A program made the position numbers and the translations under genes. Source: Schmidtea polychroa (Eukaryota). Taken from it: a DNA stretch of 64,000 nucleotides. Of the stretch, positions 3,976 through 61,917 are shown piece after piece (the first letter of the stretch is position 1; every line of letters starts with the position of its first letter). The stretch lies in NCBI GenBank assembly GCA_044892525.1, contig CM097887.1:89568397-89632396 (forward strand), written 5' to 3'. The notes under the pieces were generated by a model. It was not told the origin of the DNA and ran no database searches. It saw only the letters and a list, made by a program, of their open reading frames with translations.

Positions 3976-6900
3976 TTAAAGAAGTATGGTGAAAGTTAGG
4001 ATCAGATTATCATAATGACCTATTTCTGTAAATATAAAATTACAAAAACAACTAACCATCAACATCCCATTTAGAAGTAGGAATTGTATCATTGGGGTCC
4101 TGATTGTAGTTAATTTTCCAGAGACCTTTCGACAAGTAACAACGAACAATTTTTCCATCGTATTTTTCTTTCTCATATGAGGTTAAATACTTGATTTTTG
4201 TAAATGGCATAGAGGCTCCGTAAGCATACAGCAAACCAATCCATTTTTTATTTTTTCTGTTGTATAAATTATTGCTAAAAATACACATAAATAAATTAAC
4301 TGATTAATAACTGCCTTAAGTTTAAATTTGATATATCTGTAAAATGTAGGCATCCAAATATAAATGGTTGCTCTACCGAGAAATGTGTATGAAAAACTTC
4401 TATATGGATAGAATATTAATCCCGTCATTTCGTGTGGGATAGTTTTCTTAAGTTCAATCCAGGTCTATAAAATCTCAATGTTAATATTTAAAAAAATAAT
4501 TAATAAACAATTATAAATCTATTTAACACTAGATTTACGGGTAAAATAGCCGCAAAAATAGGTATACCTAATTCGATAAACGAAATGAAGGAGCGGGTAG
4601 AAACGAGTAATTAATATTTACCTATATTTCATGACATATCTAAAAACCAACATATGTATTCAAAAAATAATAAATCAGTATTATATATATGTAGCAATAG
4701 AATTTAATTGATATGAAATTTGAAACCCGTCAAATTGACGGGTTTCGTAAATCTAGTGTTAAAATAGTTACAAAATTCTAAATTTAAAAAATTTCAATAT
4801 TAGGGATCGAGTTTTATCATCTGGAGGAAAGTGAAAATTATCTACTGAAAAGAATAAAAAATCTTCACTTTCTCTAAATCGAACAAAGTTGCTTGATTAT
4901 CGGTTAAATTGATTATTGGTGGATTGATTATTGGTTATTTGGTTGATTTATTATTGGTTAGTTGGTTATTTGTTAGTTGATTATCGGTTAATTGATTATT
5001 GGTTAGTTGATTATTGGTTGATTGATTATTGGTTAGTTGGTTATTTGTTAGTTGGTTATCGGTTAATTGATTATTGGTTGATTGATTATTGGTTATTTGG
5101 TTGATTGATTATTGGTTGATTGATTATTGGTTAGTTGGTTATTTGTTAGTTGGTTATTGGTTAATTGATTATTTGATTGTATGGAATTTACTAGTTTGTT
5201 TAATAAGTGAAATCATGAAGAACAGTAGATGGATGGGGTACCCCTAGAGCAAGACTCCAATGGATAGTACCCCCTCCCGCCCTGGAGAAATTTTTTTAAA
5301 TATAGGTCAGGGTCAAATATGTAGGTCATTAGAATTTATTGAACGAATTTTTACAGAACTTGGACAGTTCACCATTATCATAACAAGTAGACATTGCACG
5401 TCTATCAGTCAAAAATTCAAATATCCTTATATGATTTGCAATATGTAAAATTCTTTCTTCCAGACTGACCAATGCCTATTCGGCGAGAACGATAAAAAAC
5501 TGTTGTTTCAGCTTCAATTTTCCATCTGCATGTTCATAGTCGACTGTGTTTTGGTGTGCCTGACACGTTTACTTTCAATCTCTATGGGAACGTGCATAGC
5601 TTCTGCAATTTCCTTAGCATCTCTTTCAGCATCTTAACTCCCAACGTGTGTTAGCCAAAGGTTTCAAAGTAGAATTTTTTAGGTGTCTTTTCAGGATATC
5701 CTAACGTTGAACAGAAGATGTGAATATCGTGTATAATTGTTACAGCGTTCCGAAGAAGGAAAGAGACTCCAGTAAAGATTTGGCAACGTCACAGACAATA
5801 AGGTTGATTGAATGGGTGACACCAGGATTAAAAAGGGCTTTTCTGTTCAACTTCAGCAGCCATGCTTGTATTTCGGAACAATTTTCCCTCATATTGGCTC
5901 CATTATCGCAACACTGAGCTCGAATATCTTTAAGGGACAATTGCAATGAGTTTGTTAGATTGTGGTAAATGCTTGAATAAATCCCTGCCCAGTAGTATCC
6001 TTCACACTCAGTAATCCTGTAAAATGCTGATTAACATAACATAGCGTTTGCATTCCATATGTCTCAGGAATACAGAAAGCTACTCTTGATGGCTTGTATC
6101 TGGTGTACAATTCATTATTACCGCAATGTACTTCGATTTTTTTAACTTATCAGAGATAACTGTTATGACTCTGTATAACTTTGCAAACATGAAAATTTAT
6201 GAACGATGCAAATTGAGATATTGGTGTATAATAAGGTGACCAGACATCCCGCTTTTGGCGGGACAGTCCCGATTTTTCACGATTTATCCCGCGTCAAAAT
6301 GAATAAAAAATATGTCAAGGAATGAAATATTATACAATTTTTTATATTTATAAATTGTACTTATGTAAAAATCAAAAAATATTACCATATTATTTATATT
6401 CTATTTGAACATTTTTGTTGATACCCCCTTCCTTCAAAGTTGTCCCGCTTTGCCCATCTAAAAATTTGGTCACCTTAGTGTATAAGCAAATTATGTAAAT
6501 TAGTATTGTATTTATTTAGTAAAATTAGAAATAAATATAACATAATATTGAAAGACGGCAAAAAGGTGGAAATAATTCAATACGAATTCAATAAAATTCT
6601 AGTATTATGTATTATAGTGGGCGTCGTTTCACCTGGGACAAACCATTTTTAGCATCATTCCCATATGTTCCCTATTTTTGTCAGCTTATTTGATAATTGA
6701 ACAATTTTCTAATTTTTTTAATACAAATCTATATTTTTCAAGCTAATCGAAATAAAATCAATCATGTTTCAAATGTGGATCCCACGCTGCACTGATGGCA
6801 ATTTAAAAATGACCCTGCCTAGATTTAAAAAAAAACCCAACCAAATATTCTGATCTAACAGTTAAATTTTGAATAATTCAGAAGACTATTATATTTATTA

Positions 6901-9900
6901 GAGTTTGAAGACTATAAATCAGTAATATATCGATGTTTGTTGATACTCACGAATTTTCGGCACTGTCTTTTTCAAGTGAATTCACTTAAAAAAAGCAATA
7001 CCGAAAATTCGTGAGTATCAACAAACATCGATATATTACTTATTTATAGTCTTCAAACTCTAATAAATTCAATGGAAAAAATATTTTGTGGTGAAATTGG
7101 AAGAAATAAAAGGTCTTATAATAAGACTATTATATGTTTTGAAAATTTACTTTTTACTTGCAATATCCTAATGATTTCTCCCTAAAATCTAAGACCTATG
7201 TCCTGAAAAAGTTGTTATATGATCTTCATTCAGTGAATAATTTAGTTTATGAATATTAAAAATTATGTATATGTTACATGGGAGCATTATAATTTTAAAA
7301 AGGCTTAGGTGGAGCATGACAAAAAAAATGATAGAGAAACACTATTATACAACATGGTAACACATAAGTTCATAAAGAAGAGTTTAGAATTTGATATGAC
7401 CAAAATGGAATGACGCACACTGTAAATAAAGAAAATAAAACTTTACCTTAAAAAGATCGTTGCTTTCAGATATTGTTTTCATCATAATATCAAACGGTCC
7501 ACGAGGAATTTGTGAGTCTATTTTTTCCTTCCTAACATCCATAATAAATTCCTGAATCATATCTAATCGTCTTGAATAGGACTCTTGATATATACGAGAC
7601 CCGCTAAGGGCATAAATATCTGATATTAAAAATACATAATATTTTTTGGAAGCGATAGTTTCAGCAACCAATTCCTAAAAATATTTTTCATAAAAATAAT
7701 GAAAGAAAAACTAATATTACATTTATATTAACTTATTACTGGTGACCGTCAAAATGTCTGCGTTAAAACGGGGTTTGTATATTATTATATAAAATTATTA
7801 GAAAAAACAATTATTTCAGTCATTAATAAATGTGGTTATAAAGACATCACATACAGTGGTTATAGGCATACAAAATATACAATTAAAAAATGTTACTGTT
7901 ACTTTTCATTATATTATATCAGAATAAATCGTATCATAGGTTGTTATAACATGATATTAAATGCAAGTATCTAATATATAAAGATGAAAGTTTGTTTGTT
8001 TGTTACCCATAAAATTCCCCACCGTTAGACCTAGGGTACTGAAATTGTGCATGTGACAATCATTTGACTCGGGACAGGTCATAGGCTATTAATGATCAGC
8101 AAGATATCCTATTAATGAGTGACCAACATATTTTTGAAATAAATTAACAAACACAATCTCTGATCCAATCATATTGTAACAGAAATCATATTTTTCAAAT
8201 TAATTATTTTTTTTATTAATTTTTTGACAACTTTACAATCACCTGTACCTCATGTTCTTTCCGGTATATTTGCCAATTTTAAAAGTCACTCGTGGATTTT
8301 ATCCTCTTTTAGATAACGTGTAAAAATTACTAATTGAACAGACAACTTAATATCATTTTTTTCATTTATGCAAATTGAGAAAGTCACAACTATTAATATC
8401 CATGTGAAGTTGATCTAAAATATTTACACTCATTTTTGAAATCCTTTCTTTCTGCTTAGCTGCAATTCTTGAATTCTTTGTAAAATTGTATTTGTATTGT
8501 TAAAATCTTGAAACAAACTGGAATGGAAGAAGCTTTTAACATAACCGCTTTTAAGAATAATCCACCAAAAAATGGTTTTTTGATTGTTTGACCATCAATT
8601 GTGATATTTCAAAACTGGCCTCAGTTACATTGCTTGAAATTTTTACGAATTAGAATAATAAGTTTGATTGATTCCCAGTAGTCTTTAACCGCCGAGAAAT
8701 TATTATTTCCTTTCAGTTATATTTTTATCAGCAATTTCCTTATGATTAGTTTCAAAATGTCTCTTAATAAAAGATTTCCGACATGCAATTATTCCAGATC
8801 ACAAACCACGACTTTTATCTTTATATTTATTAAAGCCATAATCAAGAGTCAACGATGGTAAAAAACTTCGCACATCCTGTAATTTTTATTTTTTCTTTGG
8901 TAACATTTCAATGGAGCAAATATTTTATAAAATAACAAAATCAATATTGACTTTTTTACATTTGCATTTCTCGATGTTGATCTTTACTAAGTGCCAGTGT
9001 TAGGCATTTATCACCTAATTTCTGATAAATTTCAGAATTTTTATTTTACAAAATATAAATATATAAATTCATGTCGATGAACTTAATATAATTGCTAGTT
9101 TGAACAATGTTTAAACTAACATATTTAAACAAGTGAATTAATCTTTAAATTATTAAAATATTAGAAATTAGAAAGAATTAAAATTGGAATATTATTAGAG
9201 ATATTTTTATAAGTAACTGTTTTTAGGATGAAATTAAAGATATTTTTTTCAGAAACTAAACACATGACTAAAAATTTTGTATGTGATAATGGTTTATTGA
9301 TATGCCCGTCTTTCCATCTTTCTGTACATTTTTTATTCAAATTCGGTTTTATCCATACTGGGTCACCAGCAGAATATTTTTCATCGATTATTATCTTTTT
9401 TTTTGTAGCTTGGCAGATTCAGTTTTCGATTATATCTAAATATGGCTCTAGATGGACATATATTATTGTTGTTTGGCGTATTATTGTACACAGCTTCTTT
9501 GATCGTTCCTGAGGACCTAGCTACTAGCGATTTGATTGTCCGAAGGCTGCGTTCAATGATCCCGTTTCCCGCTGGGAGGTTCACTGTTCTAAATAACAAC
9601 TCAACATTCCATTTATCTGCTAATTCTTGAAATGTTCTAGATCTAAAAGACATGAAATTATTTAATAATATTTCACTTGGAGCTCCTCTTTCATATAGCA
9701 CTTCATTTAAGGCATTTTATATCTCTTCTACCTTTTCTTTCTTAATTTTCTTCCAGATTGCATCTCGATGGCCTACAATAAATAATTGTCAAATATTTAT
9801 CTTTAGCGAATTTAGCTACATCAATTGCTAAACGGCACCAATTTTCATCACAGCTTAGTTCACCTTTTTCCCGTGTCACTGGCGCTGGGTCAATTGATAG

Positions 9901-12900
9901 GCATTGATTACAACTTGCAATTATTTCCGAGATCTCATTATCCACATTTAGTAGCCCCGCGTCCAATGCTAAGAACATGGCAATTCTTGTGAATTTCAAA
10001 TAACACATCTTTCGAGATTTTTGATTGCCTATTGCTGCGACTTTTTTAATAATCATCCAGTTGGCTGGTACTCTCGTTAATACATCAGCCTTGTTATTAT
10101 CTGCAGATACAAACTCAATATTCACTTTAAGTTCATACTCAATCGCTAGATCTTTTAAAAGTTCCAGCATCCGTCGTATCAACAACTCTGAATTTGCTTT
10201 TGTATGTATTTTTCTGTCGCTCTATAATATGCTGTTAACCCAACACACAACTGATTTACTATCGGATTTAATTTTGATAGACTTAAGATTCCATAAATTA
10301 ATACCCTTCACAATCGCTTCTAATTCCACTAAATTAATGTGTCTTGAATCATCAGGTTTTCGCAAACAACACGCATCTTCAACCAGTGAACCTTCCATTT
10401 CTAATACAATTCCAATAGCGATGGCACCAAATTATACCTGTCTGATTGCTGGGAACACTCCAAATACCTGACGATGGATCTCTTTCATTCACTTTTTTTT
10501 AACTTTAGGTTCATCTACGAATATATCGTCTATGTATGAACTTGTGCTATTGATTAATTCATTGTTCGTCAATACTTTATTCACAATCTCTGTCATCATC
10601 GTTGGTGCGATATTCAATCCAAATCGCATTCTCATAAGCACATATCTCTTCCCATTAACCATACAAGATTGGTATCGCCGACATGCTTTTATCCACATTT
10701 GCATATATGCATCAGATAAATCTAACATTGCAAATTCTTTACTAAAACATCTCCATGATCGTAATTTTTCAGAGCAGATTTCTGCATCCCCACTATATAC
10801 ATCAATATATTTATTGATACTCCTAAAGTCGAATACTGGACGCAGTTTCACTTTATTTGACTGAATTATACCATAAATAGGTACTGATCCGATCGGTTTG
10901 CTCATTGTTTTCTCGTAGTAATGAACTAGATAGCTCTTAGATATCCAAGAATTCAATATACGCATCATCTCCTGATCTTTACTACAATTATCATAAAAGT
11001 TCGAATTTATATTAGGTAGAAATTTCGGCGGCTCTGACTTCTAATCCCATTTGACAATCCATTTCTCGTTTTCAAATCTCGCAGAGAAATTTTCCTTCAA
11101 TATTTCTGACATACTACTACTAGAGCACGCTACATGACAAGGTGCTTCTTCGCTGCCGAATGTGGATTCTTTATTCAATCGAACTCCACCAAACCTATTA
11201 ATAAAATTCACTCCTAAAATTACATCATAATTGGATACTAATTTCGCGTATATTAAACAGTCAATATTAAATAACTTATCTCCAACCAATATATCAACTT
11301 TACTTCTATCAGCATATATTATTGAACCATCAAGTCGCAGTCATAGATTTTGTGGATTTCCTTTTACTATATTGGTAGTGCTTCCCAAATTAACTAAACA
11401 TGGTTTTACATCACCATTTACTAGGAGTCTCATATATTCACAATTCTTGGGCCACACTCGACTCCAACTTTCCCGACTTGCAAAACCTTGAAATATGTCC
11501 CATAATACCGCATTTTGTACAACTTACGTTGCGTCTTTCTGGACAGTATCTTACCACATGATTATCAGTATTGCATATATAGCATTTTTGATTGGCTTTC
11601 CTTCCACTATCTGATCTTGGTACAACTACTGCAACAGTTCCATTGTCATAAAATTGATGACTTGCGATTTTCTTTGCTTGAGCGACTAACTCATTCATCG
11701 TTGACGCTGTTGACATCTTTAGTCAATTTGACAAATGACTTGGTAAGCTATTTACAAAAAATCGGGTTAGTAGATCACCTAAACATTCCAACAGTGACCT
11801 TATTTTATTTACATGAACATCCAATTTATCACCCATTAAAAACTTTTTCTGTAAATGTTTTGTAAAGGCTTCTTGCTCGCTTATATCGAAAGTTTTTCCT
11901 TCTTCAGCATTCCGAAATCCATTGTCGTGTTGCTTTTCTTTAACTGTTTAAAGACTGCATACGATTGCCTTTCAAGTAAAAATGACATTACACTCATGAC
12001 ATTTTTCACATTCTTGGCTTCCAAAATAATTTCGAGTTTCTCCAACCATTCTTCCACATCTGTATTTTTGCCATCGAATTTTCCAACATTTTCAATTATA
12101 ATCTTGTTGATTTCCATTGCCCGGATAGCTTAAGACTAAACACGTTTTTTGAAATTCTATTTTACAACATTTTTATAATATTTAAACAACATTAATTGTT
12201 TGATATTACATTATTCCTACAACTATTTTTTATCTTAATTTAACTTTAAGTTTAAAATTTAATTTTATAATAATATTTCACAAATTATTATCACTTACCC
12301 CGTCAATAATAGTATCAATTAAAAATTTCCCTTTATGGTGAGGATGAGGAAAATTAAGATTTTCCACTTTAAAATACCTATTTTGTTCATCAATCATGTA
12401 TACGTGATTTTCATTTACGATAAACATTAAATATCGTTTCCCATTTGTTCTCCAGGTATGGTAGTATTGATTCGACATGAAATGTTTGTAAACTTTCCTT
12501 GTCACTAGTTTATATTTATGTCCAACAAATCCGTGCCTATTCAAAATTAAATTGTAAGAACAAAAACAATCATTTATGGGAAAAATATTAAAAGTATGAT
12601 GAAAAAATAATATGAAAAGTCTATCATTAATTAAAATTTTATATAAAAATATAGTAATTAAATATATCTAAATTAATTTTTTCAATGAAAATTTATCCTA
12701 ACCACTTAAGCATCTTGAACCAGACCATCTCGCTCGACTTATGTATTTCATTATGCACTTAGACGAGTAACTCACGCCGAAATATGTTCTGATTTTATCT
12801 CGAGCAAGAATTTAGAATTCAATGGGTTTAATTGCACGAAGTGTGCTTCAGGCGTGTTCGTTCACGCTTCTTTCGTTATTACTGTATATTTTCACGTAGT

Positions 12901-15900
12901 ATAATGTGAGTGTACGGTATTTACGTAACATTTAATAATTTTCCGGGTGACATAGAAAGATTGGAAAAAAATTGCAGCTTTTAGCAATATTGGTAAACCA
13001 TAGCTTCAAGGCCAATCTCAGACATCAGTGGAAGGACTGGATGACTGAAGGCGCGGGTATGCGACGCGCAACTTATGCACAAATGGGTGAGTGGATCAGT
13101 AAAGCATTGGATAATATCAGCATTAGGATAATAACATAAAATATTTGATATTAATATTATTTTAATTTACGTAAATATAATTTATAATTTGAATATTGGA
13201 CTCAGTTTTGAATAATTATTTAAATTTTTGACAAAAAATTACATTGTTGTTTGAAGTACATTTTGAAGTGCTTCTCTCAATTTGAATAGATTTTTTTCGT
13301 CTTTTATGTTCACTAGAAATTCCGGTGTTTCTACTCCTATTTTAGGTTTGATTTCTAGTTTACACTCCGGCTCACAACTTTTGTCATCAATTCGCCTTTT
13401 CTTTAATGATCCCATTGCAACTGAATCTTTCAACAGTGCCGAAGATCGTTTATTACCAATAACTGGTGAGTGTTCGAGTATAGGTCTTGAAATATCCTGA
13501 GTTTCATCTTGCCTATCCGTTAAAGATTGAGCTTGACATTTATCCTCCTCTTCTACCTCTATAATGAAAGTAACAATAAAACTATAACTCAATAAATTAC
13601 AATTTAATAGATNNNNNNNNNNNNNNNNNNNNNNNNNNNNNNNNNNNNNNNNNNNNNNNNNNNNNNNNNNNNNNNNNNNNNNNNNNNNNNNNNNNNNNNN
13701 NNNNNNNNNNNNNNNNNNNNNNNNNNNNNNNNNNNNNNNNNNNNNNNNNNNNNNNNNNNNNNNNNNNNNNNNNNNNNNNNNNNNNNNNNNNNNNNNNNNN
13801 NNNNNNNNNNNNNNNNNNNNNNNATATACCATCAAAATTAATAGACTGTGGATCTTTTGGAGTATCTTCTCGTTTTTCTCTTGATTTATCTTCCTCTTGA
13901 TCTGTGCGATCCGTTAAAATTTGAGCCTGGCATTCTTTCTCATCTTCTACCTCTATAATAAAATTAACTATGAAAATATAACTCAATAAATTACAATTTA
14001 AGACATTACATAAAAAATAATTATTAATATTATTTACTATCATTATTATGAGATTTTGAATTTTTAAATGTTAAATCTCAAAAATGTTAAAAGATAAATA
14101 TTTAAAAAATTAAATAGTATATTTAAACCAAATATATTTTAAGAAATTGTGTTAATTATCAGTCTACCATCATAATCAATGTCAAAAGTTATATACAGAA
14201 ACAATAATTATGTATTAGTAATGATTTAATGAACTAATTAAATAATCTCAATAAATTCATTGCTGATTGAATGCTAATTGTAGGGAGTTGTGATTTACCT
14301 TGTGATTTATCACCAATGCATCGCATACAATTCTTTTCCACTTATTATAAAGGTTTTAAGATTTTAAAATCTTTCAAGTCAGTTGCCCTTTTACACATTT
14401 TCCTATGCTCAATAATATGACTAACACTTTTCGATCGGCTGTATTCTTGAAGCTTTTTAGGAAATTAGTAAATCTATTCAATGTATACGGCATTGAACCC
14501 ATTACATGAAAACTTATAAACTAGATCAGACACTAAATTTATTGCGGTTTGAGATTTATTCCTAAACATATTTATTATTATTACAAATTAGTGAAAATTT
14601 AAAATAAGTAACTGTTGAAATGCTGAAACTTCTGTATTTTAACGAGTGGTAAAAGTTCGGTAGTCCTAGCGTCAGCTGCATGGAGATTGCGCATTTTTAA
14701 TAGTTTCTATTTAAATCTAATAAAGAATTTAATAATTTTCAGAACCAATTTAAAATGGTAAAGAACACCACAAAACTGCATTTGTTAAGAATTAGTTTAC
14801 AGTAAAAGAAAAAATAGCCATTATTAAGGAGACCAAAACAAATTCTATAAGATCGGTTGGTAAAAAGCACAATATTCCCGAGTTAAATATTAGACGTTGG
14901 ATTAAGCAAGAAATAAACTTGAAATCAATGATTTCAAATTCGGACGTAAAAATCAGAACAAGAAAAAGATTAGGTGGGGGTAAAAAGGCCCAATTTGATG
15001 AAGTGGAGCAAGAACCTTGCCAGCTTGTCATCAATCGTGACGAAAAAGGATTGACAGTAAAAATATTGTTTTGAAGGCAAAATCTCTCCGCGACAAATCT
15101 ATCAAAATATTGAAGATAAAGACAAAAAGGAAGGATTGATTTGCAAACGAGAAGAGCTTTTAAAGTTTAAAGCATCAGATTCGTGGTGCTATAATTTTAA
15201 AAAGAGACGCACTTGATGTCACGTGACCAGACAGGGTGCCGTAAACTTTTAGAGAATTTTAAAGAAATAACTTCCGATTTTATTATTGATGTTCGGGAAA
15301 TAATAATAAAATATAAAATTTAGCCTGAGAATATAATGAATATTGACCAAATTCCCCGAATGTTCGAATATGAGCCAAAAGGTACTATCACTATAAGAAG
15401 AGCCAAGGAAGTGTTCATGAAAAAAGCTTCAACTTCACACAAAAAATTCACATTCACTCGAACAATAAATGCTTCAAAACATTTCATTAACATGCATGTC
15501 CTATTTTCTAAATTAAAGGTAAAAACTGATAGATGGTTTCTCTATAGACACAAATTGCACTGTTATGTGGTCAGATGTAACTTTGAAAACATATTTTAAT
15601 AATGTAATTCTTAAGAGACCCCAAACTGCATTATTAAAACAACACATGCTTCTGATTCTAGATTCGTATCCAGTACATTTGAAAGTCATAAATGAAATTA
15701 AAGAGAAATTTGAGGAACAGTATAACATTCATTTTAAGATTGCACATCCCAATTTCACTGATCTACTTCAATCAATAGATTTTGGGCTGGGAAGATCATT
15801 TCAAACTTTCTACACTGAGAAGTACGACTATTACATTACAAGAGCATTGGATGATTTTAAATTAAAGACTAAAATGGGAAATATTAAAATGGCTTCTTAT

Positions 15901-18900
15901 GTTGAATTCTCTGGTTGGATCAAGGAATGAAGTGAAAAACTAACTGTTGATGATATATCGAAATGTTTCAAAGTAGTGGGAGCTCATCCAGATGTTAACG
16001 AAAATAATTTTATGGAACAACTGCATGAGGCTTTGAAGAAATATTTCTTGGGGATTTTTGATCAAGAAAAGTGGCTTGAAAATTATGAGAAACTAATTGA
16101 AGATTTTGGAGAAGATAACTTTTTGGATAAAATTTGTGATGAATACAAATTTACAAATAACTCCAGAATTATCAGAATTATGTAATAAAACGAGGAAAGA
16201 TTACTGGAAACAGAAAAATTATCAGAAGGCAAAATAGAACTGCACGCCTTTTCAATCATTCTCGATATTCAAATTACTTTGATCGAATTGGACGATGATT
16301 ACACCGAACTTGATCGTTTAACCAATTAAAAGTGTGGTAATGTGCGCATTAAGACTATTATATTGAAGTTTAGAGATTGTTATGCATACAGTTAGGAATA
16401 AAAATAATATTTTTTTTATATTATATAAATAAATAAAATCGTATAATAATTGTTATTGTTATTGTGTCGTCGTTTTTTTCATCAAATTTGCGATCTATTT
16501 GAAATTATGTTAGAGTTATATATATTTTCAATTTAACATTTTTTAATAAGTTACGCGCGCAATCTCCACGGGGGCTGGCGGTAGGAAATTAAAAGGAATA
16601 GTTGTTTGAATGTAATCAATAAATTATATTTTTTTATTAAATCGTTTGTCTAGACGAGTGTTTCCCAAAGTGTAGGTCGCGATCCGACACCGGGTCGAAA
16701 AGAAATTCAGCAATATCGTAACGGGCCGCGGTCAAAAAAGTTTGGGAAACGCCGGTCTAGACATTTTGTTATTGATCTATGAGGTNNNNNNNNNNNNNNN
16801 NNNNNNNNNNNNNNNNNNNNNNNNNNNNNNNNNNNNNNNNNNNNNNNNNNNNNNNNNNNNNNNNNNNNNNNNNNNNNNNNNNNNNNNNNNNNNNNNNNNN
16901 NNNNNNNNNNNNNNNNNNNNNNNNNNNNNNNNNNNNNNNNNNNNNNNNNNNNNNNNNNNNNNNNNNNNTGAATGCTATGTTGAATCTAGTGATATTATCA
17001 ATGAGGATATAAAAACACATATTCGAAAGATTTTTGAAAGCATCCCTAAGCTTATGCAAAGATTCACCGGTAGGGCTTTACCCATTGAAAAGTGTGCGGC
17101 AAAAAACTTTGATCAAAATGAAAATTTAGTTTTACCCAAGTAGATCGTTAGGAACCCGCTAACTCACAAATGTAGTTCAACTCAAAAATTTTTAATTTTT
17201 TAAAATTTTTTATAATTTTTTAAGATTTTAAACAATTTTTAATGGTTTTTCTCAGAAATTTAATAAATTTTTACAATTTTCAAGGTATCTACATAAATAT
17301 TTTCAGAGTATTTAAGTAGGTCAACTCAAAATACTTAGAAAAAGTTTTGAAAATTATGTAGGTCAACTCAAAATACTTAAAAATAATTTTTGAAAAAGTA
17401 TGTCAACTCAAAATACTTAGAAAATTTTTTTTAATTTTTTAGAAATAAGTAGGTCACATACACACATGCTATATATTTTCAATAAATAGTCTAACTCAAA
17501 GTATTATTATTTTCAAAGTTATTTTCAATTTTATTTTCAATTTTATTTTCAAAGTATTATTTTCAAAGTTCTTATTATTATTTTATTTTCGAAGTTTCAT
17601 TATTTACTTAAATATTCAATTTTATGAAATAATTTTAAATAAATGCAATTAATATATATCTTATCTTATCTATGTCACTTCTCAATATATTTTGATATAC
17701 CATTTATCATAGAATAATGAATAATTCTAACACGGAATTTACGCTGCTTACCATTTTAGAATAAGATTTTTTATCAAAATTTGTGATAATTTGACTGTTT
17801 CAATTTGATGGAGTTATTGTTAATTCGTTTTATTAAATATTTATCCGACAAGATATTTTGACCCCCCATAGGTATTGGTCGTAAGGTACTGGTCGCAAGG
17901 GCACTGATATGTTTTAATGATTTTATTTAGGCAAATCTTTGGTTATTATTTGGCACTAAATTCATTGGTAATTTTTTAGAGTTGATGTTAGTGCGATTTA
18001 GTAAATATTCAAATGAATTACTATAATTTTTTGTGAATTTCATGTTAATTGAAAGAATATTTAAAAATTTAAGGTTTTATTGTTAATTCTAAGACAAATT
18101 TAATTAATTTCTTGATAATTTGGTATATTTTATTGACTTGTTTTTTAAATAAAAATTATTTTTTATGACAGCTAGGTTAATAATTAGAGTTTTTACAATA
18201 ATCAAGTGATAGGATAAATTATTTAATTTTTATGATGACTTTGTAATGATAATTTGACTAAATAATTTTTTCATATATTTTCTAAGAATATTTCCATTTA
18301 CACATTGATGAACTTTTAAATATTGAAAATCTAAAGTTGAAACCAGCTTATTTTATCATGAATTTTATTTGAAATCTACTTGAAAATTATTGTAAAATAT
18401 ACTGAAATTTGTGATTTAGTTTGGAAGATATATCAAGTTATAATTACTATAATTGGCTGAATCGATGAAGAATTATGATCAATCAATATATTTCATCTCT
18501 AGTTAGGTATTTCATGGTAAATGTGGTGAAATATTTGTAGAAAATATTGATTTTAGTGAATTTTGATCTTTTAGTGTGCTCTTACTACATGAATTTAGCT
18601 ACTAAATTATTTCAATGGAAAAAATGTATGGTATCTGTAACAATTAAATAAAATTAATATTTTGAAGAATTTTCTATGGATTTTAAGAGAATTGATATAT
18701 TAAAGGGCTCAATTGGGTGACATTAAGGGATATAGCCGGTTGGATTTAGTGAGGGTTCAGTTAAGATGGGAATATATGATTTTTAAGGAATATAGTCGGT
18801 TGGATGTGTAAAGGGGTAGAAATATTTGGTGAAGGATCGGTTAAGGTGGAAATGTTTTGAATATCTCTATTTAAATCGATAATTTTCTTATTGGTAAAAT

Positions 18901-21900
18901 ATTAATGTTTCAAGGGAAATAGTCAGTATTTAGCTATGAGTCAATAATAGTTCCTGTGAAATTATGTCGTTTTAGGTTTATTAGATTGTAATGAATCTAA
19001 TTGCACAGTAATTTAGATTTATGTTTTACTTTAGAACCAGTTTTTATTAATTTTCTATTAATTATCCACGGTTTTATTAAGTCGTTTAGAGTTAATGATC
19101 AATTAGGTGTTTATTTACTTGGTTTTGACAATGAAATATTTGAAATCTTTGGAATTAATTGGGAATGATATCAACGGTTATTGCTTTAAATTATTTATCT
19201 TTATTTAACATGTTATAGACCGATATTCATTGTGGGGATATCGGAGATAAAACTTGAGAAATATTGACTTAAAAGAGTTGGACATCGACAGAAACTAAAG
19301 AAAATTGAACTTTATTGAAGGAAATTTATTTTAATATTATTATTTTGTGGACTGATGGCTGAGTGGGAATTTACTTTTTGGTTTTTTGTTTTGAAGTTAG
19401 GTATGAGGTTCAATTCCAAGTATGGGTGACTTTTTTCAAAAATTAATTTTTACATGTTATTTCTAATATAGATCGAATCAGCATGCTTTATTTGCTATAA
19501 ATTGAAATTTTCATAAAAATCGGTTAATTATTTTTACTTAAAGGTTCATAGTATTTTCTCACCTACTGGCATAAAATGCAGTAAACAATCATTAAATAAT
19601 AATTGATATTAATTTTCTGACCATTTGGGTATTTATTTTATTATACGTTGTGATTTCATTAAATATTTTGTGTTGTACCCTTTAAATAACAATAGAAAAA
19701 TTTCATCTATTGACCATTTTTAATATAAGGTATGCAAACGTTATGAAATGTATAAAACAAGGAAAATGATCCATTTATAATACATAGAAACTAGTAGTAG
19801 TAGTAGTAGTAGTAGATGTCGATGTCGATGTCGATGTCGATGTCGTGGTCGTAGTTGTGGTTGTGGTTGTGGTCGTGATCGTGGTCGTGGTCGTGTTTGT
19901 ATTTTAGCATTGGTCATACTCGGTTGTATGAATAGTACTGGAGTAGTCAATAGTACTGGATCCTTATATAGAGTAGTCGATGTGTGTGTGTGTTGTACAC
20001 TAATCATTAGTACTGGACTCTCACATAATAGTAGTCGATGTGTGTTGTATGAATAGTACTGGACTAGATGTGTGTGTTAGCAACCAGTGACCACTAAGTA
20101 TGACGACACAGTTACCATGGTATTGAGTCATCAATAAGTGGATAGTTAGTAACAGGTTTGTATATGACATAATGGACACTTGAGTGGTCAGTTAGTGACA
20201 ATGTGTGTATGACGTATTTGGTACGCGAGTGGTCAGTTAGTAACAATGTGTGTATGACTTAATGGACACGTGGCTGGTCAGTTAGCAACAGTGTGTGTAT
20301 TACGTAATCGGTCATTATTGCGTAATCGATATACCCCCCTTTTTATATCTGACGGGCTCACATCCTTCTATTAAATTAATTAATTAATTAGAAATTGAAT
20401 CGGTTGAATATCAGTTAAGGGTAAAATATGGTCATTTGAAGGAATAATATTATCGGGTGAATAAATCTTCCAATGATATTTGCTAAATTACCTTTTGCTA
20501 AATATTGTTTTAAATGACAAAGTTAACCAATAAATTAGTCGATCGAAATAAGAATTCGGTAAAAGTTACATTTAAAATATTCTAATTATTCACGAATTTC
20601 TGATAAAGATATATATGAGCTTCTATTTCTCACTAAATTACCTAGTAATTTCTAACTGATATACATGTACCTTAATTTACTAATTAATATACCCTTGCGA
20701 CATGTTGAATGTGAGCAGTACCCTTGCTAGCAATACCCTTAGGGGGACAGAATATCTTGTCGGATAAACTCGGAGTATATATAAGAACTTGCAATATGCT
20801 ACCCAAATTGTCTTTATTGATACATCAAAATACTGTTATTTAAAAGATTAACTAAAAAATACTCAAAAATACTATATTATCTAGGAATTCATTTACTGAA
20901 TGATACCTTAAAATTTAAAGCTTAAATGATCTTGCTTCTAATATACATATGAATTGATTTCTAAAATAATCATGTTTTTCTATCAAACATGCATAAATTG
21001 AATATAAATTTGCTGAATATTACTCAAATAAACATGTTTCTTGCTAAAGAATTTACTAATTAATATCTCCAAATGATATTTCGCAGAAAGGTATATAAAA
21101 TCTCTATGAATTTGTTAAATGTTTTCTTCAATATAAATTGTTAATTAGTTGCTAAAATAGTCACAGAATTGTCCTAAGAATTTTATTCAAAACTACCCTC
21201 AATTAATCATATATTAATAATTTTAAATATTATACTAAATATGTTTCTAGTTAAATGATTGAAATATTTGGTATTACTATCAACTATATAAAAATTGTTA
21301 TGAATCCAAGAATATTTTATTTAACTGGTACAACCAAAAACATGGATTTCTAACTAAATTGGTAAATTTTTCTGGAAATATTTTACTTACGAAATTCCTA
21401 TATTTAAAATAACCATGTATTTTTTATTAAATGGCCTAAATATTTGCTATTTGGTATCTAAAAAATCAAGTTTTTCTTAAATTGTATGGTATTGTTAAAT
21501 ACTTTAAAATAATAATAATAATAATTGATGGAAATTTTCGTGCAACTAATGAAAATGTTCTTGAAAATAATCATAATATTGAAAATATTGAAAATGTTGA
21601 AAATTATGAAAATATTCATGCAAATGATGAAAATCATGAAATTGATGTAGAAATTAAGTTCTATGAATATTTAAGTAAATAGTGAAACTTCGAAAATAAA
21701 ATAATAATAAGAACTTTGAAAATAACTTTGAAAATAATACTTTGAAAATAACTTTGGAAATAAATTTGAGAATAATAATACTTTGAAAATAATATTTTGA
21801 GAATAGCTTTGAAAATAATAATACTTTCAGTTACACTATTTATTGAAAATATATAGCATGTGTGTATGTGACCTACATATTTCTAAAAAAATTAAAAAAA

Positions 21901-22003
21901 ATTTTCTAAGTATTTTGAGTTGACATACTTTTTTCAAAAATTATTGTTTTTAAATATATTAATTTGTTCCTTCAAAAATATCTGCTTGTTAGTACAGGAT
22001 AAT

Positions 22004-22066
<63 letters not shown>

Positions 22067-22147
22067 TTGCGACATGTTGAATGTGAGCAGTACATTTATG
22101 AGCAATACCCTTAGGGGGTCAAAATATCTTGTCGGATAAACTCCGAG

Positions 22148-22196
<49 letters not shown>

Positions 22197-48712: not shown

Positions 48713-48737
48713 AAAAAAAAAAAAAAAAAAAAAAAAA
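48713..48737. repeat. Poly(A) tract (poly-T on the minus strand)
   Basis: Run of about 25 A. Confidence 0.9.
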
Positions 48738-57887: not shown

Positions 57888-58310
57888 CAGGGCCGGCTCA
57901 GAGGTCGGGACTTAGAGGCCGCGCGCTTTCATATTTCTAACAATTATTAGTAGCTATGTCAAGTTTTTGACACCAAATGCAACGCAGTTTTTCCAAATTA
58001 AAGTTAATTAAAAATTATCTAAGAATAAACATGCAACAAGATAGGTTAGAGGGGTTGGATATCTTGTCAATAAAACAGGAGGTAACAAAACAGATAAATT
58101 TTGATGATATTATCGATGAATTAGCAGTAAAATAAGTTTGTACGAAATAAGAATAAAAAATATTATGTATGTATATTATTAAATATATTGAAGAAATAAA
58201 TATTTCATTAAATAAATCGCCAAAATTATCTTCATGTATCATTTCTTCATTTTTGGAAGGGGCCCTCATATAATATTTTCCCTGTGCCTCGCAAAACCCA
58301 CAGCCGGTCA
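57888..58310 (+). mobile_element. Non-autonomous hAT (Tip100-type) element
   Basis: Ends cagggccggc / gccggtcatg, internal hATC remnant (RLEGLDILSIKQE..FDDIIDELA), and a weak TSD. Confidence 0.6.
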
Positions 58311-60289
58311 TGCTTATCCCCATAATATATTATAATAATCTTTAACTAATAATAACTTAGAATCAAAAATAATATTTATTTTTATATTTTCAAATAAAAT
58401 ATATTTCTTCATAGAAAGTAATTGAAATGTATGTCAATCTTGAGAAATATAATATTCATTCTAAAACAATTAAATTTAATTAAAAATATTGCCACTTTCT
58501 AACCTTTTTTTGTTTTATCGATGATATCATAGATGTCATCAATGTAAACAGGATTAAGAATGCTCTCCATTATATCTAAAAATGGGTTAGAAATCAAAGA
58601 GAACTAAAACATATTAAATACAGTTCAAGTATAAACCGGTTAACAATAATTAAAAAAAGATATGATAACCATTTGCTGCAAATTTTAAGTTTATTAAAAC
58701 AAAAAATGAGAACTTTCGACTATGAAATAATCCACTTTAATCTATTCCATTGTCGAAGGTTTATCATAACTTTTACTAATTATTTTGTGAATTGATGAAG
58801 CTACGGAGGAAACATCTTTTTTAAAAACCTTTTCCCATTACGTCATCCTTATATGCACCACTGCTATATATTATATGTAACTAAAAATTTGTTTTACAAA
58901 TACAACAATTTCAATGTATTCATGAATATTGACTTCTTAATTTTACAGCAGCATACTGATCAATCACGTAATCATAAAAATTTTCTTAATGCTTCTTTCA
59001 ACACTAAAAAACGATAGATCACTCAGACGATCCTGCCCCCTTGAAGAACTTGAAAATAATAAAACAAGCTTCATGTTGTGAAATGCAGAGATTGCTGTTG
59101 TAATAGATAAAAAAGTGCCTTTGAGAGGGAAAGCTTTGAAAATAATTCAAAACAAAGATAAATAAAACGAATAATAAAAGAATCATTACTATGGACATTA
59201 AGTAACCTCCAAAGGTCTGTTTCTACAAATTGAAAAACGACAATTTTCAATTTCGAGATAATATTCATCTGTTAAAGATGAAAAACTTTGCAAAACAAAT
59301 CATGAAACATGATTACTAATAAACTATAAAACTCTTAATATGTTTGTTTACCTTTTCTTCATATTAAAATTAAACTAAATGGCAGCACATTTTTATTTCT
59401 GTACTAGCGAAATCCCGGAATCCGTTGCAATGCCCCTCAAAAAATTTTATGCATAACATACAGAAACCTATCACCACCGGCACGGAAACAACAATATAGC
59501 AATACATACATTGTCTGAAACATAAATAAATATACTAAATTTCATGGTTAAATCAACTCAATAGCATTAATAATACATACGCTATGATACAACTATGATA
59601 GAAAATGTATGAAAATTAAACTTCATTTCACTTAAACAATTGAAGGTCTTTCTACCGTATAGGAAAATTTCAGCAAAATAGTACGAGTATAAATTGAGTA
59701 ATGTTAGAAAACGTACGAAAAAATTTCTAAAAATTCCGACTTTACCTATCTTCTGCTCACTAATAGAACTGAAGCCATCATCCGATCGACCTCACAAACA
59801 ATAGGGTTCCTCATTACAGATGTATCTTACAAATAACGAAAGTTTGAAGACGATAGCTTTAACCACTCTCGAGTCTAGAGCGGACATACATACATTGTCT
59901 GAAACATTTTTCCTATTATATTATATTTCCTATTATACTGATTTAAAAAGGCAGAGCCGAAAATTTGTGAGTATCAACAAACATCGATATATTACTGATT
60001 TATAGTCTTCAATATACATATATATATATATATATATATTTCTATTAAATTCTTTAGATAATATGACGGACTTTTTACAATAAAAGTAAAATATTTATTC
60101 GAATATGTAAAACCCTTTTCAATAAGTAAAAATATTTGTTTATTTTCCGAATGGGGCTTTATTTCTATTAATTTTGCTCATGAAAGCTTCTCTTACTATT
60201 TTTGGGCAAAAATCGACACTGTTCTATTATAGAAGATGTAACCGATAGAAAATAAACGTATATGCGGTCTTTAATTTTTCTATCTCTCT

Positions 60290-61917
60290 TTCTTATCCTT
60301 TAATAAAGGAAGTTATTCGATAAAACTGCAAAAATAACCGCAGTGTGGATTTGTATGTTTCTATAATATAAATTGGTTTATTTCGTATCAAGTTTTTTTA
60401 TTATGGTAAAAACAATATAAATTAAATTTTATTTTAAATAAACTAACTATTTGCCACGGTTATGTAATTCGGGTTGGATTTGTCTGTTCGTTCTCTGATA
60501 ATTTCCCATGTCTTAGATATTTTGTTATAAATACATTCCACAATTTTGTTGTTATAAATTGTTCTATCTTCTTTTGAAACCCGCTCAATCTTACCGAATG
60601 GTTCATTTCGACCGCCGACAAAAAGATTTCCCTCATATCTCGATTCCTGACTAAACGGAATCAGTAGAAATAATCACTCAATTCGTTCAACTAGAATTAC
60701 CCCTCCCCTTTGACATATTCACATTTCAAATAGAAATCTATCGAATTATAATCTGGCGGTTTCCATTTCAAACTATGGTAGTTCTTTCCAGTAATATAGA
60801 CATCTTCCTTGTCTGCTGGTTGGAAAATCAATCCATCCATTTCGTGGAGGAGTTTATCACGAAAATCTCCGTCCCATATTCTTTCAGTTGTACTTAAGTC
60901 CCAAAAATCCTTCATTAAAACACCAAATGATTCTTGGCCTTTTACTTCTCTGGGTAAAAATTTTCTTTTCTCAATGATTTCTTTTTGAATTAAAAATAAT
61001 CTGTGCGAGAAATTAAAAATCCCGACATTGACCGAGTTTAAGCATACGATGTCAAAAATAAGAAATCTTGCGATTTGAACATCATCGACTACATCAATGA
61101 CCATTTCACCGTCCATGATCGTATTGGAATGATGCTCAGTTGGCGACATGGGAAAATACAGTTTCTCAACTCGAAATACAAAATTGTCTCGATCCAGCAT
61201 ATATATGAGATCACTTCCAATTACGATTAACATGTAACGGAATCCGTCGGGTTTCCAGCTAACCATATATTTTTTTTTAGTTAATAAGTTTGCATTTTTA
61301 TGAGTCATTGATACTGGTTGAGTGCCTGGGAAACCAAATCTAAATATTTCAATTTATTTTATAAAATTTAATTTAATTATAAATTTACTTATTAACATTC
61401 ATTAAATTTCGAACAAATTGGCGTATATTTTCCATCTCTGTGACATCCAATACTGGTAGAACTTTACTCACTCCTTCCATAAATCTCGGAACTTTTGGCT
61501 GATTAAATGCTGCTGCCGGTGGTTTTGAAGCTACCACTGGACACTTTCCTGAAACTGCATTAGTTACAGTCGAAATAATGTTCATGCCGATGTCTTCAAT
61601 TTTTTCTGTAATACTTGGCTTGGAAGCAACAATTTGTTTCTCAGGAGATGAAATCATTTCAGGTGTTGGTAGATTCGGACAAGAATCAACGACTTCTGTC
61701 TCTACAATAGAAGTTTCCATTCTGTCAACCTCACAGGCTTCTTCTAGCATTGGTTCTGGTTCTCTAGATTGTAAATCGCACATTTCTTGATCTTGGATTT
61801 CTTGTAACTTAGATGCTTTGGAAGTTTCTTTTGGTTGTGATGTAACTTTAATATCTTCCTTGTCTGCTTTTGGAGAAATTGGAATATAACTCAACGCTTC
61901 TTTCTCTACATTTCTGG
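60290..61917 (-). CDS. RNGTT: Paralog C: capping enzyme linker, guanylyltransferase and OB-fold exons (5' part not identified)
   Basis: Exons 61917-61389, 61339-60701, 60650-60448 and a tentative last exon starting at 60360. Motifs WKPDG, DGEMV, FLIFDI, MDGLIF, KWKP and RERTDK are intact. The OB exon is 203 nt, the same as in B. Confidence 0.88.

What the first reader, a model, noticed from the sequence alone, without database searches (positions are those of the whole stretch)
3976..61917. Tandem array of three capping-enzyme paralogs with divergent fates
Seen: three co-oriented RNGTT-like loci (dead A, canonical B, and C with an active-looking GTase). Known: RNGTT is usually a single-copy essential gene in animals. 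Inference: a lineage-specific expansion with sub- or neofunctionalisation of cap metabolism. The divergence between copies is far too large for allelic haplotigs.
Basis: partly seen in the sequence, partly recalled or inferred. Interest (0 to 1): 0.72.

Follow-up and report, generated by a model that had tools for sequence, protein, structure and literature searches.

The report
Tandem capping-enzyme gene family, one dead
One animal genome carries three neighbouring copies of the enzyme that caps messenger RNA (normally a single essential gene): a conservative copy, a fast-evolving but intact second copy, and an expressed copy with both active sites destroyed.

Summary
Three intron-bearing RNGTT-type genes lie head to tail on the minus strand, in the order C, B, A.

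- **B** (44007-39919, 8 exons, 593 aa) has every catalytic motif. It is 89% identical to its counterpart in a related species.
- **C** is a complete enzyme, not only a guanylyltransferase. Its five triphosphatase exons lie just past the window's end. It has 9 exons and 675 aa, both active sites are intact, its linker is 149 residues long, and it is 76% identical to its counterpart.
- **A** runs from 35026 to 2075, not 3976, in 12-13 exons. It has lost the triphosphatase P-loop arginine, the guanylyltransferase lysine nucleophile and motifs IV-VI. It still has an uninterrupted 595-636-codon frame and GT-AG at every intron. Contigs of runs guessed to be RNA carry two of its predicted splice junctions.

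All three assembly gaps fall in introns of A. The genome also holds an intronless guanylyltransferase-only gene (D) in two inverted copies, plus a fragment, 27.6 Mb away.

In trees, A, B, C and D sit apart from all other animals (94/90). B and C are each other's best hits outside their own type. This supports a lineage-specific expansion; the functional divergence is inferred, not shown. The scan's other notes on A (s1-229092, s1-229191) concern this same stretch, not other DNA.

The parts
2075..35026 (-). Gene A: RNGTT paralogue with both active sites mutated. 13 exons (12 without the duplicated exon 6a), 636 or 595 aa.
   Evidence: Spliced model with no stop and 12 GT-AG introns. The whole protein scores 306 bits, E 1e-94, against a profile of 60 animal RNGTTs.
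34963..35026 (-). A exon 1 (ATG at 35026)
34049..34152 (-). A exon 2 (104 nt, same length and phase as B exon 2)
33906..34003 (-). A exon 3. Its donor GTGATT lies 40 nt before assembly gap 33675-33865.
25572..25660 (-). A exon 4a (followed by an A-specific 76-nt intron)
25420..25495 (-). A exon 4b with the degenerate P-loop HCIHGYNLT (25490-25464). Cys is kept; Arg is replaced by Leu.
25222..25373 (-). A exon 5 (end of the triphosphatase domain)
13830..13952 (-). A exon 6a: a diverged tandem copy of the start of exon 6b. It is in frame with a phase-1 donor. Its use in mRNA is unknown. Gap 13613-13823 follows it.
   Evidence: 86% identity over 93 nt
13243..13558 (-). A exon 6b (linker)
12299..12536 (-). 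A exon 7 with dead motif I, W-R-T-N-G (12454-12440), where active enzymes have W-K-x-D-G.
7447..7674 (-). A exon 8 (motifs III/IIIa retained)
   Evidence: An RNA-derived contig covers 7447-7602 and joins it to 4464.
4301..4464 (-). A exon 9 (motif IV is MTGLIF; motif V is IYIWMP)
4057..4256 (-). A exon 10 (OB domain; motif VI lost)
2075..2133 (-). A true last exon (stop TGA at 2077-2075)
   Evidence: The loose end of contig X1 at 4057 matches 2104-2133.
39919..44007 (-). Gene B: canonical RNGTT, 593 aa. Exons: 44007-43923, 43885-43782, 43735-43635, 43588-43424, 43373-43243, 41222-40307, 40242-40040, 39995-39919.
   Evidence: HCTHGFNRT at 43494-43468 and WKADG at 40866-40852. 685 bits against the RNGTT profile.
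58499..61917 (-). Gene C, the part inside the window. Exons: 61917-61389 (long acidic linker), 61339-60701 (guanylyltransferase; WKPDG at 61257-61243), 60650-60448, 58575-58499 (stop). Exons 1-5, the triphosphatase with HCTHGFNRT, lie outside the window at L011:870-792, 748-645, 599-499, 446-282, 234-104.
   Evidence: The related-species protein P0003 spans both domains.

Best explanation
The window holds a head-to-tail array of three paralogues of the animal bifunctional mRNA-capping enzyme (RNA 5'-triphosphatase plus GTP:mRNA guanylyltransferase, RNGTT type). The order along the minus strand is C, B, A. The array arose by gene duplication within this animal's own lineage, probably a free-living flatworm (not verified).

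Shown:
- B keeps every catalytic motif and is the slowest-evolving copy.
- C also keeps both active sites. It changes about twice as fast and carries a linker more than twice as long, a feature shared with its counterpart in a related species.
- A has lost the P-loop arginine of the triphosphatase. In the guanylyltransferase it has lost the lysine nucleophile, the motif I aspartate and motifs IV, V and VI.
- A nevertheless keeps an open 595-636-codon frame over 33 kb and 12 canonical introns.
- A is transcribed and spliced as predicted.

Inferred:
- B is the housekeeping nuclear capping enzyme.
- C is a second working capping enzyme, restricted to some tissue, stage or class of RNA.
- A is a pseudoenzyme that acts by binding rather than catalysis. 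Candidate partners are the phosphorylated Pol II tail, an RNA 5' end, or partner proteins.
- A fourth member elsewhere on the chromosome (D, intronless, guanylyltransferase only, two inverted copies) is most simply a retrocopy of a B-like mRNA that stayed intact.
For: Gene models:
- B. C. A.
- Introns shared in position and phase: 7 in all three genes, plus one shared by A and C only.

Catalytic residues:
- A's Arg369 aligns with Lys294 of human/mouse capping enzyme (chains 8p4a_M, 3s24_A, 3rtx_A).
- A's Cys121 aligns with Cys126 and A's Leu127 with Arg132 (chains 8p4b_M, 1i9s_A).

ORF maintenance:
- By base composition alone, 636 stop-free codons have probability about 2e-23.
- A's tree branch is 5.2-5.4 changes per site. 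That much change without constraint would have broken the frame.

Expression of A:
- Contig X2 joins 7447 to 4464, skipping 2982 nt with GT..AG ends on the minus strand. This is exactly intron 10.
- Contig X1 continues from 4057 into 2133. Both fit the exons with 0-2 mismatches.
- No A-like retrocopy exists in the genome that could mimic this.

Rates:
- B is 89% identical to P0002, C 76% to P0003, D 84% to P0001.
- Linker lengths are C 149 and P0003 140, against B 64 and P0002 62.

Lineage-specific origin:
- B and C are reciprocal best hits outside their own type.
- The BCD clade has 93/92 support. The ABCD split from other animals has 94/90.
- The three genes are adjacent and in the same orientation.
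Against: - No enzyme activity, protein or expression pattern was tested.
- The two runs with spliced A contigs are labelled 'RNA?' (a guess). They cover only the last four exons.
- No counterpart of A was found in 1.84 billion representative proteins (best 47% identity). Purifying selection on A therefore rests on the open frame, not on dN/dS. Annotation of the related species is evidently sparse, so this absence is weak evidence either way.
- A is a very long branch. AU tests do not reject A+C (p 0.078) or A with the rotifer odd paralogues (p 0.16).
- Three assembly gaps lie inside A, and continuity across them is inferred.
- A's triphosphatase keeps its cysteine, so residual or altered chemistry cannot be excluded.
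Confidence: 0.72

Rival explanations
1. A is an unprocessed pseudogene that is still transcribed. Its open frame is a leftover and it has no function.
For: Every catalytic motif but one is gone. Its introns are swollen with transposons. No counterpart was found in the protein libraries. It has the longest branch in the tree.
Against: It has 636 codons without a stop in a 29% G+C genome where about 8% of random codons are stops. All 12 introns keep GT-AG and phase. The protein still scores 306 bits over both domains. Two junctions are used in RNA-derived contigs. A protein at about 33% identity to its paralogues cannot have drifted that far neutrally and stayed open.
Confidence: 0.12
2. The copies are ancient, separate families (at least A, perhaps C) that predate this lineage and were lost elsewhere. 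On this view it is not a local expansion.
For: A's position is weakly supported (87/40). AU tests do not reject a grouping with the rotifer odd paralogues (p 0.16). Rotifers and sandflies also have degenerate paralogues.
Against: The rotifer odd paralogues nest inside rotifer canonical enzymes (100/100), so they arose independently. B and C are reciprocal best hits. The ABCD side of the tree has 94/90 support. The three genes are adjacent and co-oriented. A exhaustive profile search found no A-like protein (R-x-N-G motif) in any other organism.
Confidence: 0.1
3. The array is an artefact: collapsed haplotypes, a mis-join at the gaps, or contaminant DNA.
For: Three assembly gaps lie inside A. 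The sequence on either side of gap 13613-13823 is partly duplicated.
Against: The copies are 30-54% identical as proteins. B, C, both intergenic regions and A exons 1-3 are on gap-free sequence. The duplicated flanks are only 86% alike over 93 nt and then diverge. Four runs of the same organism label, of unrecorded kind, hold 76-90% of the words of A's 3' part. B, C and D have counterparts in a related species. Composition and tiny introns are the same throughout.
Confidence: 0.03
4. The genes were brought in by a virus or a mobile element. Large DNA viruses and some elements encode capping enzymes, the guanylyltransferase domain sits in one exon, and a Polinton fragment is nearby.
For: There is a Polinton-type PolB fragment at 30907-31722 and a weak capsid-like hit at 27489-27929. 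A fish iridovirus capping enzyme fell next to A in the first tree.
Against: A, B and C have the animal triphosphatase-guanylyltransferase architecture and host-type introns at shared positions. The Polinton fragment is on the other strand, inside an intron of A. The viral row is itself a long branch, and it was left out of the second tree.
Confidence: 0.02

Closest known systems
Mammalian RNGTT / Mce1 (human and mouse mRNA-capping enzyme; PDB 3S24, 3RTX, 1I9S, 8P4A) and C. elegans CEL-1
   Same: The architecture is the same: an N-terminal cysteine-phosphatase-type RNA triphosphatase (HCxxxxxR P-loop), a linker, a nucleotidyl-transferase domain with motifs I-V, and an OB domain with motif VI. 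B and C keep all of these. A aligns over both domains.
   Different: Here there are three linked genes plus a guanylyltransferase-only gene, instead of one gene. A replaces Lys294, Arg132 and motifs IV-VI. C has a 149-residue acidic linker.
Trypanosome dual capping enzymes (TbCgm1 for spliced-leader RNA, and TbCe1); recalled from the literature, not tested here
   Same: A trans-splicing organism with more than one guanylyltransferase, one of them dedicated to a special RNA class. Unverified notes of this scan say this genome also trans-splices.
   Different: The trypanosome enzymes have different domain fusions (methyltransferase, NTPase-like) and are not RNGTT-type. No link between C or D and spliced-leader RNA has been shown.
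Unannotated RNGTT-like paralogues of bdelloid rotifers (Adineta vaga UJR12745.1 = P0124; Adineta steineri CAF1513430.1 = P0183 and CAF1047957.1 = P0166; Didymodactylos CAF1080090.1 = P0141)
   Same: They are extra RNGTT-derived genes with degenerate active sites: K-x-[A/V/S]-G or S-P-D-G in motif I. P0183 also has HS in place of HC in the P-loop, so it is hit in both domains like A.
   Different: They nest within the rotifer canonical enzymes (100/100), so their origin is independent. Most keep the lysine. Several lack the triphosphatase domain. None has A's R-T-N-G motif.
DUSP11 / PIR1 and baculovirus BVP (stand-alone cysteine-phosphatase RNA triphosphatases)
   Same: They share the HCTHGxNRTG P-loop. 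A DUSP11-like gene exists in this genome on another chromosome.
   Different: They have no guanylyltransferase domain and belong to a separate, old family, not to this expansion.

Membership tests
Animal bifunctional mRNA-capping enzyme (RNGTT/Mce1/CEL-1) | N-terminal cysteine-phosphatase-type RNA triphosphatase with an HCxxxxxR(S/T) P-loop: genes B and C | tested here: met
   B has HCTHGFNRT at 43494-43468. C has HCTHGFNRT at window-equivalent 64352-64326 (L011).
Animal bifunctional mRNA-capping enzyme (RNGTT/Mce1/CEL-1) | The same P-loop in gene A | tested here: not met
   A has HCIHGYNLT. Cys is kept, but Leu sits where Arg132 of the solved enzyme aligns.
Animal bifunctional mRNA-capping enzyme (RNGTT/Mce1/CEL-1) | Guanylyltransferase motif I KxDG with the lysine nucleophile: genes B, C and D | tested here: met
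   WKADG in B, WKPDG in C, WKPDG in D.
Animal bifunctional mRNA-capping enzyme (RNGTT/Mce1/CEL-1) | Motif I lysine nucleophile in gene A | tested here: not met
   A has WRTNG. Its Arg aligns with Lys294 of 8p4a_M, and the motif aspartate is Asn.
Animal bifunctional mRNA-capping enzyme (RNGTT/Mce1/CEL-1) | Motifs III, IIIa, IV, V and VI of covalent nucleotidyl transferases | tested here: inconclusive
   B, C and D have all of them: DGEMV, MDGLIF, LKWKP, RER(T/N)DKS. A keeps only III/IIIa (DGELV). Its motif IV is MTGLIF, motif V is IYIWMP, and motif VI is NYNQDPND. So the feature is met for B, C and D and not met for A.
Animal bifunctional mRNA-capping enzyme (RNGTT/Mce1/CEL-1) | Both domains in one polypeptide, in the order triphosphatase, linker, guanylyltransferase, OB | tested here: met
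   A, B and C models. P0003 confirms this for the C type. D lacks the triphosphatase.
Animal bifunctional mRNA-capping enzyme (RNGTT/Mce1/CEL-1) | Triphosphatase and guanylyltransferase activity | not testable with these tools
   Needs recombinant protein: enzyme-GMP adduct formation and gamma-phosphate release assays.
Pseudoenzyme (inactive paralogue kept by selection): gene A | Catalytic residues lost while the fold-defining sequence and the open frame are kept | tested here: met
   306 bits against the RNGTT profile over both domains. 636 codons without a stop and 12 GT-AG introns.
Pseudoenzyme (inactive paralogue kept by selection): gene A | Expressed as a mature, spliced transcript | tested here: met
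   Junctions 7447/4464 and 4057/2133 appear in contigs of two runs of the same organism label. The runs are only guessed to be RNA, and only the 3' exons were examined.
Pseudoenzyme (inactive paralogue kept by selection): gene A | Conserved in related species under purifying selection | tested here: inconclusive
   No A-type protein was found in 1.84 billion representatives. The related species is represented by only a few predicted proteins, and no related animal genome was available.
Processed retrogene: gene D (outside the window) | Intronless copy of an intron-bearing parent | tested here: met
   D is one 392-codon ORF that spans the places where B has two introns. It is 61% identical to B.
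Processed retrogene: gene D (outside the window) | Poly(A) remnant and target-site duplication | tested here: inconclusive
   The downstream sequence is A/T-rich like the rest of the genome, with no clear poly(A) tract. The two copies are 1.95-kb inverted arms.

The most novel reading that the evidence does not exclude
The lineage has split mRNA capping among dedicated proteins. B would serve bulk Pol II transcripts. C (or the guanylyltransferase-only D) would serve a special RNA class or cell type: spliced-leader RNA, germline or stem-cell transcripts, or cytoplasmic recapping. The doubly inactive A would act as a non-catalytic regulator, occupying the capping enzyme's docking site on the phosphorylated Pol II tail or on 5' ends. 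A would then be a natural separation-of-function allele for the proposed catalysis-independent roles of capping enzyme. Independent degenerate paralogues in bdelloid rotifers would make capping pseudoenzymes a recurrent invention.
Probability: 0.2. Interest if true: 0.8.

Novelty: new variant of a known kind. Interest (0 to 1): 0.6.

Why it matters
The capping enzyme is treated as a single, essential, invariant housekeeping gene in animals. This genome has a linked family with three distinct outcomes, plus a fourth member elsewhere:
- a conserved enzyme (B);
- a second intact but fast-evolving enzyme with a remodelled linker (C);
- an expressed copy with both active sites destroyed but its reading frame kept (A);
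- a guanylyltransferase-only retrocopy elsewhere on the chromosome (D).

A is a ready-made natural test of whether capping enzyme has roles that do not need catalysis, such as promoter-proximal pausing, Pol II tail binding or signalling. C and D allow a test of whether capping can be divided by cell type or RNA class in a trans-splicing animal. If the organism is a planarian, RNAi and single-cell atlases make all of this directly testable.

Tried and rejected
- **A's last exon.** An RNA-derived contig that continues from 4057 into 2133 refuted it.
- **Apparent frameshift in A's triphosphatase exon.** The profile hit at 25531-25653 in another frame turned out to be a 76-nt intron with a GTAAGT donor and a TTTCAG acceptor.
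- **Search for an A counterpart.** A exon 7 against 1.84 billion representatives gave nothing above 47% identity and no R-x-N-G motif. The similar-looking P0185 is a ginger (plant) protein.
- **Search for B-type and C-type relatives.** Beyond one related species only P0044, a 232-aa fragment, turned up. The age of the duplications within the phylum could therefore not be set.
- **AU tests.** A+C gave p 0.078 and A with the rotifer odd paralogues gave p 0.16, so neither was rejected.
- **Literature.** Three searches found nothing on capping-enzyme paralogues in planarians or on capping pseudoenzymes.
- **Viral or mobile-element origin, haplotigs and contamination.** Considered and rejected; see the rival explanations.
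- **NCBP3 match.** The weak match at 45873-46223 (17 bits against a cut-off of 29) is taken as chance.
- **Extra triphosphatase hit.** The hit on C4 is a DUSP11-like gene, not a family member.
- **Not done.**
  - Folding A: the spliced protein has no reference, and I did not paste it.
  - Synteny in related species: no related animal genome is available.
- **Organism.** It is not named by the tools. 'Flatworm/planarian' is my inference from 29% G+C, 37-64-nt introns, the scan's unverified spliced-leader notes and the tree. It is unverified.
Full report
**Setting**

The window is G000:C3:89568397-89632396. The genome is 781 Mb and the window is about 29% G+C. It contains three N runs: 13613-13823, 16786-16968 and 33675-33865. 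I think it is a free-living flatworm. My reasons are the very short introns (37-64 nt), the AT-richness, the scan's unverified notes on spliced leaders and the tree. This is an inference only.

**Is the observation there?**

A whole-genome scan with Pfam PF01331 (guanylyltransferase catalytic domain) gives six matches. Three are in the window, all on the minus strand:
- 40366-40929 (213 bits, full domain in one open frame);
- 60760-61320 (185 bits);
- 12299-12502 (54.5 bits, first third of the domain).

PF03919 (the OB domain) follows the first two. ORF translations and tblastn with B's exons show the triphosphatase exons of B at 43243-44007. They also show weak but ordered triphosphatase matches far upstream of the third locus, at 25238-25508 and 33923-35023. 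A profile built from 60 full-length animal RNGTTs, run against all stop-to-stop fragments, gives three co-linear series of exon hits covering profile positions 2-573. The three co-oriented loci are therefore real.

**Gene models**

*Gene B*. Eight exons, 44007-39919, 593 aa. Introns are 37-64 nt, plus one of 2020 nt.

*Gene C*.
Five exons in L011:104-870 (window-equivalent 64104-64870) encode a complete triphosphatase domain with HCTHGFNRT.
- With the four exons inside the window (61917-61389, 61339-60701, 60650-60448, 58575-58499), C is a 675-aa bifunctional protein.
- The related-species protein P0003 spans both domains, which supports a single gene.

*Gene A*.
- Exons: 35026-34963, 34152-34049, 34003-33906, 25660-25572, 25495-25420, 25373-25222, [13952-13830], 13558-13243, 12536-12299, 7674-7447, 4464-4301, 4256-4057, 2133-2075.
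- All 12 introns are GT-AG.
- The frame is open for 636 codons, or 595 without the bracketed exon 6a.
- Seven intron positions and phases are shared by A, B and C. An eighth is shared by A and C only. A has four introns of its own.

**Assembly gaps (tested first, as asked)**

All three gaps fall in introns of A.
- One begins 40 nt after the donor of exon 3.
- One lies in the 11.3-kb intron 6.
- One lies between exon 6a and exon 6b. It starts 6 nt after a GTATAT donor and ends 54 nt before the acceptor.

The flanks of the last gap carry a diverged duplicate of the intron end plus the exon start: 86% identity over 93 nt, then unrelated sequence. That is too different for alleles, so I read it as an old tandem exon duplication. 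Whether 6a is spliced in is unknown, but either way the frame holds.

Continuity across the gaps is inferred from exon order, orientation and phase, not shown by reads. B, C, both intergenic stretches and A exons 1-3 lie on uninterrupted sequence.

**Catalytic residues**

| Site | B | C | D | A |
|---|---|---|---|---|
| Triphosphatase P-loop | HCTHGFNRT | HCTHGFNRT | no domain | HCIHGYNLT |
| Motif I | WKADG | WKPDG | WKPDG | WRTNG |
| Motif III | DGEMV | DGEMV | DGEMV | DGELV |
| Motif IV | MDGLIF | MDGLIF | MDGLIF | MTGLIF |
| Motif V | LKWKP | LKWKP | LKWKP | IYIWMP |
| Motif VI | RERTDKS | RERTDKS | RERNDKS | NYNQDPND |

Alignment to solved structures puts A's Arg369 on Lys294 of the human/mouse enzyme (8p4a_M, 3s24_A, 3rtx_A). 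It puts A's Cys121 on Cys126 and A's Leu127 on Arg132 (8p4b_M, 1i9s_A).

From established knowledge of covalent nucleotidyl transferases and cysteine phosphatases, the lysine is the GMP-accepting nucleophile and the P-loop arginine holds the phosphate. A should therefore be inactive in both reactions. Because the cysteine is kept, altered chemistry cannot be formally excluded.

**Is A a gene or a wreck?**

- In this base composition about 7.9% of random codons are stops, so 636 open codons have a chance of about 2e-23.
- A is only 30-34% identical to B and C. Its tree branch is 5.2-5.4 changes per site. That much change without selection on the frame would have broken it.
- The whole A protein still scores 306 bits (E 1e-94) over both domains of the RNGTT profile.
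- I laid contigs of four runs with the same organism label on 3900-7750.
  - One contig of X2 covers 7447-7602 and 4373-4464 without a mismatch. It skips exactly the predicted 2982-nt intron, with GT..AG on the minus strand.
  - One contig of X1 covers exon 10 (4057-4207) and runs on for 51 letters. These match 2104-2133, directly behind an AG acceptor.
- The X1 contig corrected the last exon.
- The runs are only guessed to be RNA. However, a joined form needs either RNA or a retrocopy, and the genome has no second A-like locus.

A is therefore transcribed and spliced, at least over its last four exons.

**Other copies in the genome**

- PF01331 and PF03919 also hit C3:61958205-61959071(+) and 61963631-61964497(-). 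Each is one 392-codon intronless ORF with a basic N-terminal tail, no triphosphatase domain and all guanylyltransferase motifs. I call this gene D.
- The two copies are 1.95-kb inverted arms, 97.65% identical, with a 4.2-kb spacer.
- D is 61% identical to B and 48% to C.
- A decayed D-like fragment lies at C3:61514468-61514698.
- A search with B's P-loop exon finds only B, C, A and a DUSP11-like gene on C4.

**Relatives elsewhere**

- With D as query, the three best hits are unnamed UniParc proteins. They are the counterparts of D (P0001), B (P0002) and C (P0003) in one related species.
- Identities are B 89%, C 76% and D 84%. C's long linker is shared with P0003 (149 and 140 residues, against 64 and 62 in B and P0002).
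- With P0003 or P0002 as query, the next best hit is the other paralogue (497 bits). All other animals score 441 bits or less.
- A exon 7 against 1.84 billion representatives found no A-type protein (best 47% identity).

**Trees**

- *Tree 1* (34 rows, LG+C20). B+P0002, C+P0003 and D+P0001 are each fully supported. B, C, D and P0044 form a clade (93/92). A is its sister (87/40).
- *Tree 2*, after removing three very long distractor rows. One branch (94/90) separates {A, B, C, D, their counterparts, P0044} from all other animals, including Macrostomum and rotifers. The order inside that group is unresolved.
- *AU tests* do not reject A+C (p 0.078) or A with the rotifer odd paralogues (p 0.16).

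The sequence signal for A's exact place is weak. Adjacency, orientation and the tree all point to a local origin.

**A parallel found on the way**

Among the hits to A's exon were RNGTT-derived proteins with degenerate motif I:
- from bdelloid rotifers: Adineta vaga, A. steineri and Didymodactylos. One, P0183, has both HS in place of HC and S-P-D-G in place of K-x-D-G;
- from sandflies.

The rotifer ones nest inside the rotifer canonical enzymes (100/100), so they arose independently. Extra, partly inactivated capping-enzyme genes are therefore not unique to this lineage. I found no paper describing any of them.

**Interpretation**

*Shown:*
- a linked three-gene array plus dispersed members;
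- intact motifs in B, C and D;
- a doubly mutated, open, spliced A;
- unequal rates of change;
- duplications older than the split from one related species and, as far as the sampling goes, younger than the split from other animals.

*Inferred:*
- B is the housekeeping enzyme;
- C is a second active enzyme with a restricted role;
- A works by binding, not catalysis;
- D is a retrocopy.

None of the functional statements was tested.

**Verdict**

I rate it a new variant of a known kind and moderately to highly interesting. The main reason is that A offers a natural, testable case of a non-catalytic capping-enzyme paralogue.

Noticed in passing
G000:C3:61957307-61959260 and 61963447-61965395 (L002, L003, L016, L017): An intronless, guanylyltransferase-only capping-enzyme gene (392 aa, all motifs intact, basic N-terminal tail) is present as two inverted 1.95-kb arms. 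They are 97.65% identical with a 4.2-kb spacer. It has a counterpart (P0001, 84%) in a related species.
   Followed up: partly
G000:C3:61514468-61514698 (L006:1426-1650): A short decayed fragment resembling the guanylyltransferase-only gene D: a 74-aa ORF covering motifs I-III only.
   Followed up: no
window 13830-13952 and 13243-13558, flanking gap 13613-13823: Tandem duplicate of an intron end plus exon start inside gene A (86% identity over 93 nt, then divergent). Both copies are in frame, with matching splice phases. Whether the upstream copy is used is unknown.
   Followed up: partly
window 9381-11716 (-), 15336-16185 (+), 27489-32685 (+): The introns of gene A hold pieces of an LTR retrotransposon (reverse transcriptase, an integrase-like ORF, a zinc-knuckle gag-like ORF), a DDE_1 transposase remnant and a Polinton-like fragment (PolB, weak double-jelly-roll hit).
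   Followed up: partly
window 36454-37974 (-), 49894-53241 (-), 54258-54911 (+): The intergenic stretches hold three mobile-element pieces: an intact-looking 506-aa BED-finger (hAT-like) ORF between A and B, a 1115-aa LINE-type reverse transcriptase ORF between B and C, and an LTR-element RT/RNase H fragment.
   Followed up: no
window 4523-4802, 6222-6479, 6867-7124: Stretches inside A's intron 10 are covered at very high summed depth by many short contigs of run X8, with mismatches. They are probably expressed dispersed repeats, not part of the A transcript.
   Followed up: no
proteins P0124, P0141, P0145, P0166, P0170, P0183, P0184 (bdelloid rotifers and unnamed ENA records); P0158, P0174 (sandflies): Other animals carry unannotated RNGTT-derived paralogues with degenerate motif I (K-x-A/V/S-G, S-P-D-G, I-A-D-G). 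P0183 also lacks the P-loop cysteine. The rotifer ones arose independently of gene A.
   Followed up: partly
G000:C4:29822631-29822768 (L018:1772-2272, -): A DUSP11/PIR1-like stand-alone RNA-phosphatase gene with an HCTHGLNRTG P-loop and a low-complexity tail. It belongs to a separate family from the capping-enzyme array.
   Followed up: partly
window 45873-46223 (+): A G+C-richer stretch (41%) has overlapping ORFs on both strands and a sub-threshold Pfam match to nuclear cap-binding protein subunit 3 (17 bits, cut-off 29). This is most likely chance or part of a mobile element.
   Followed up: no
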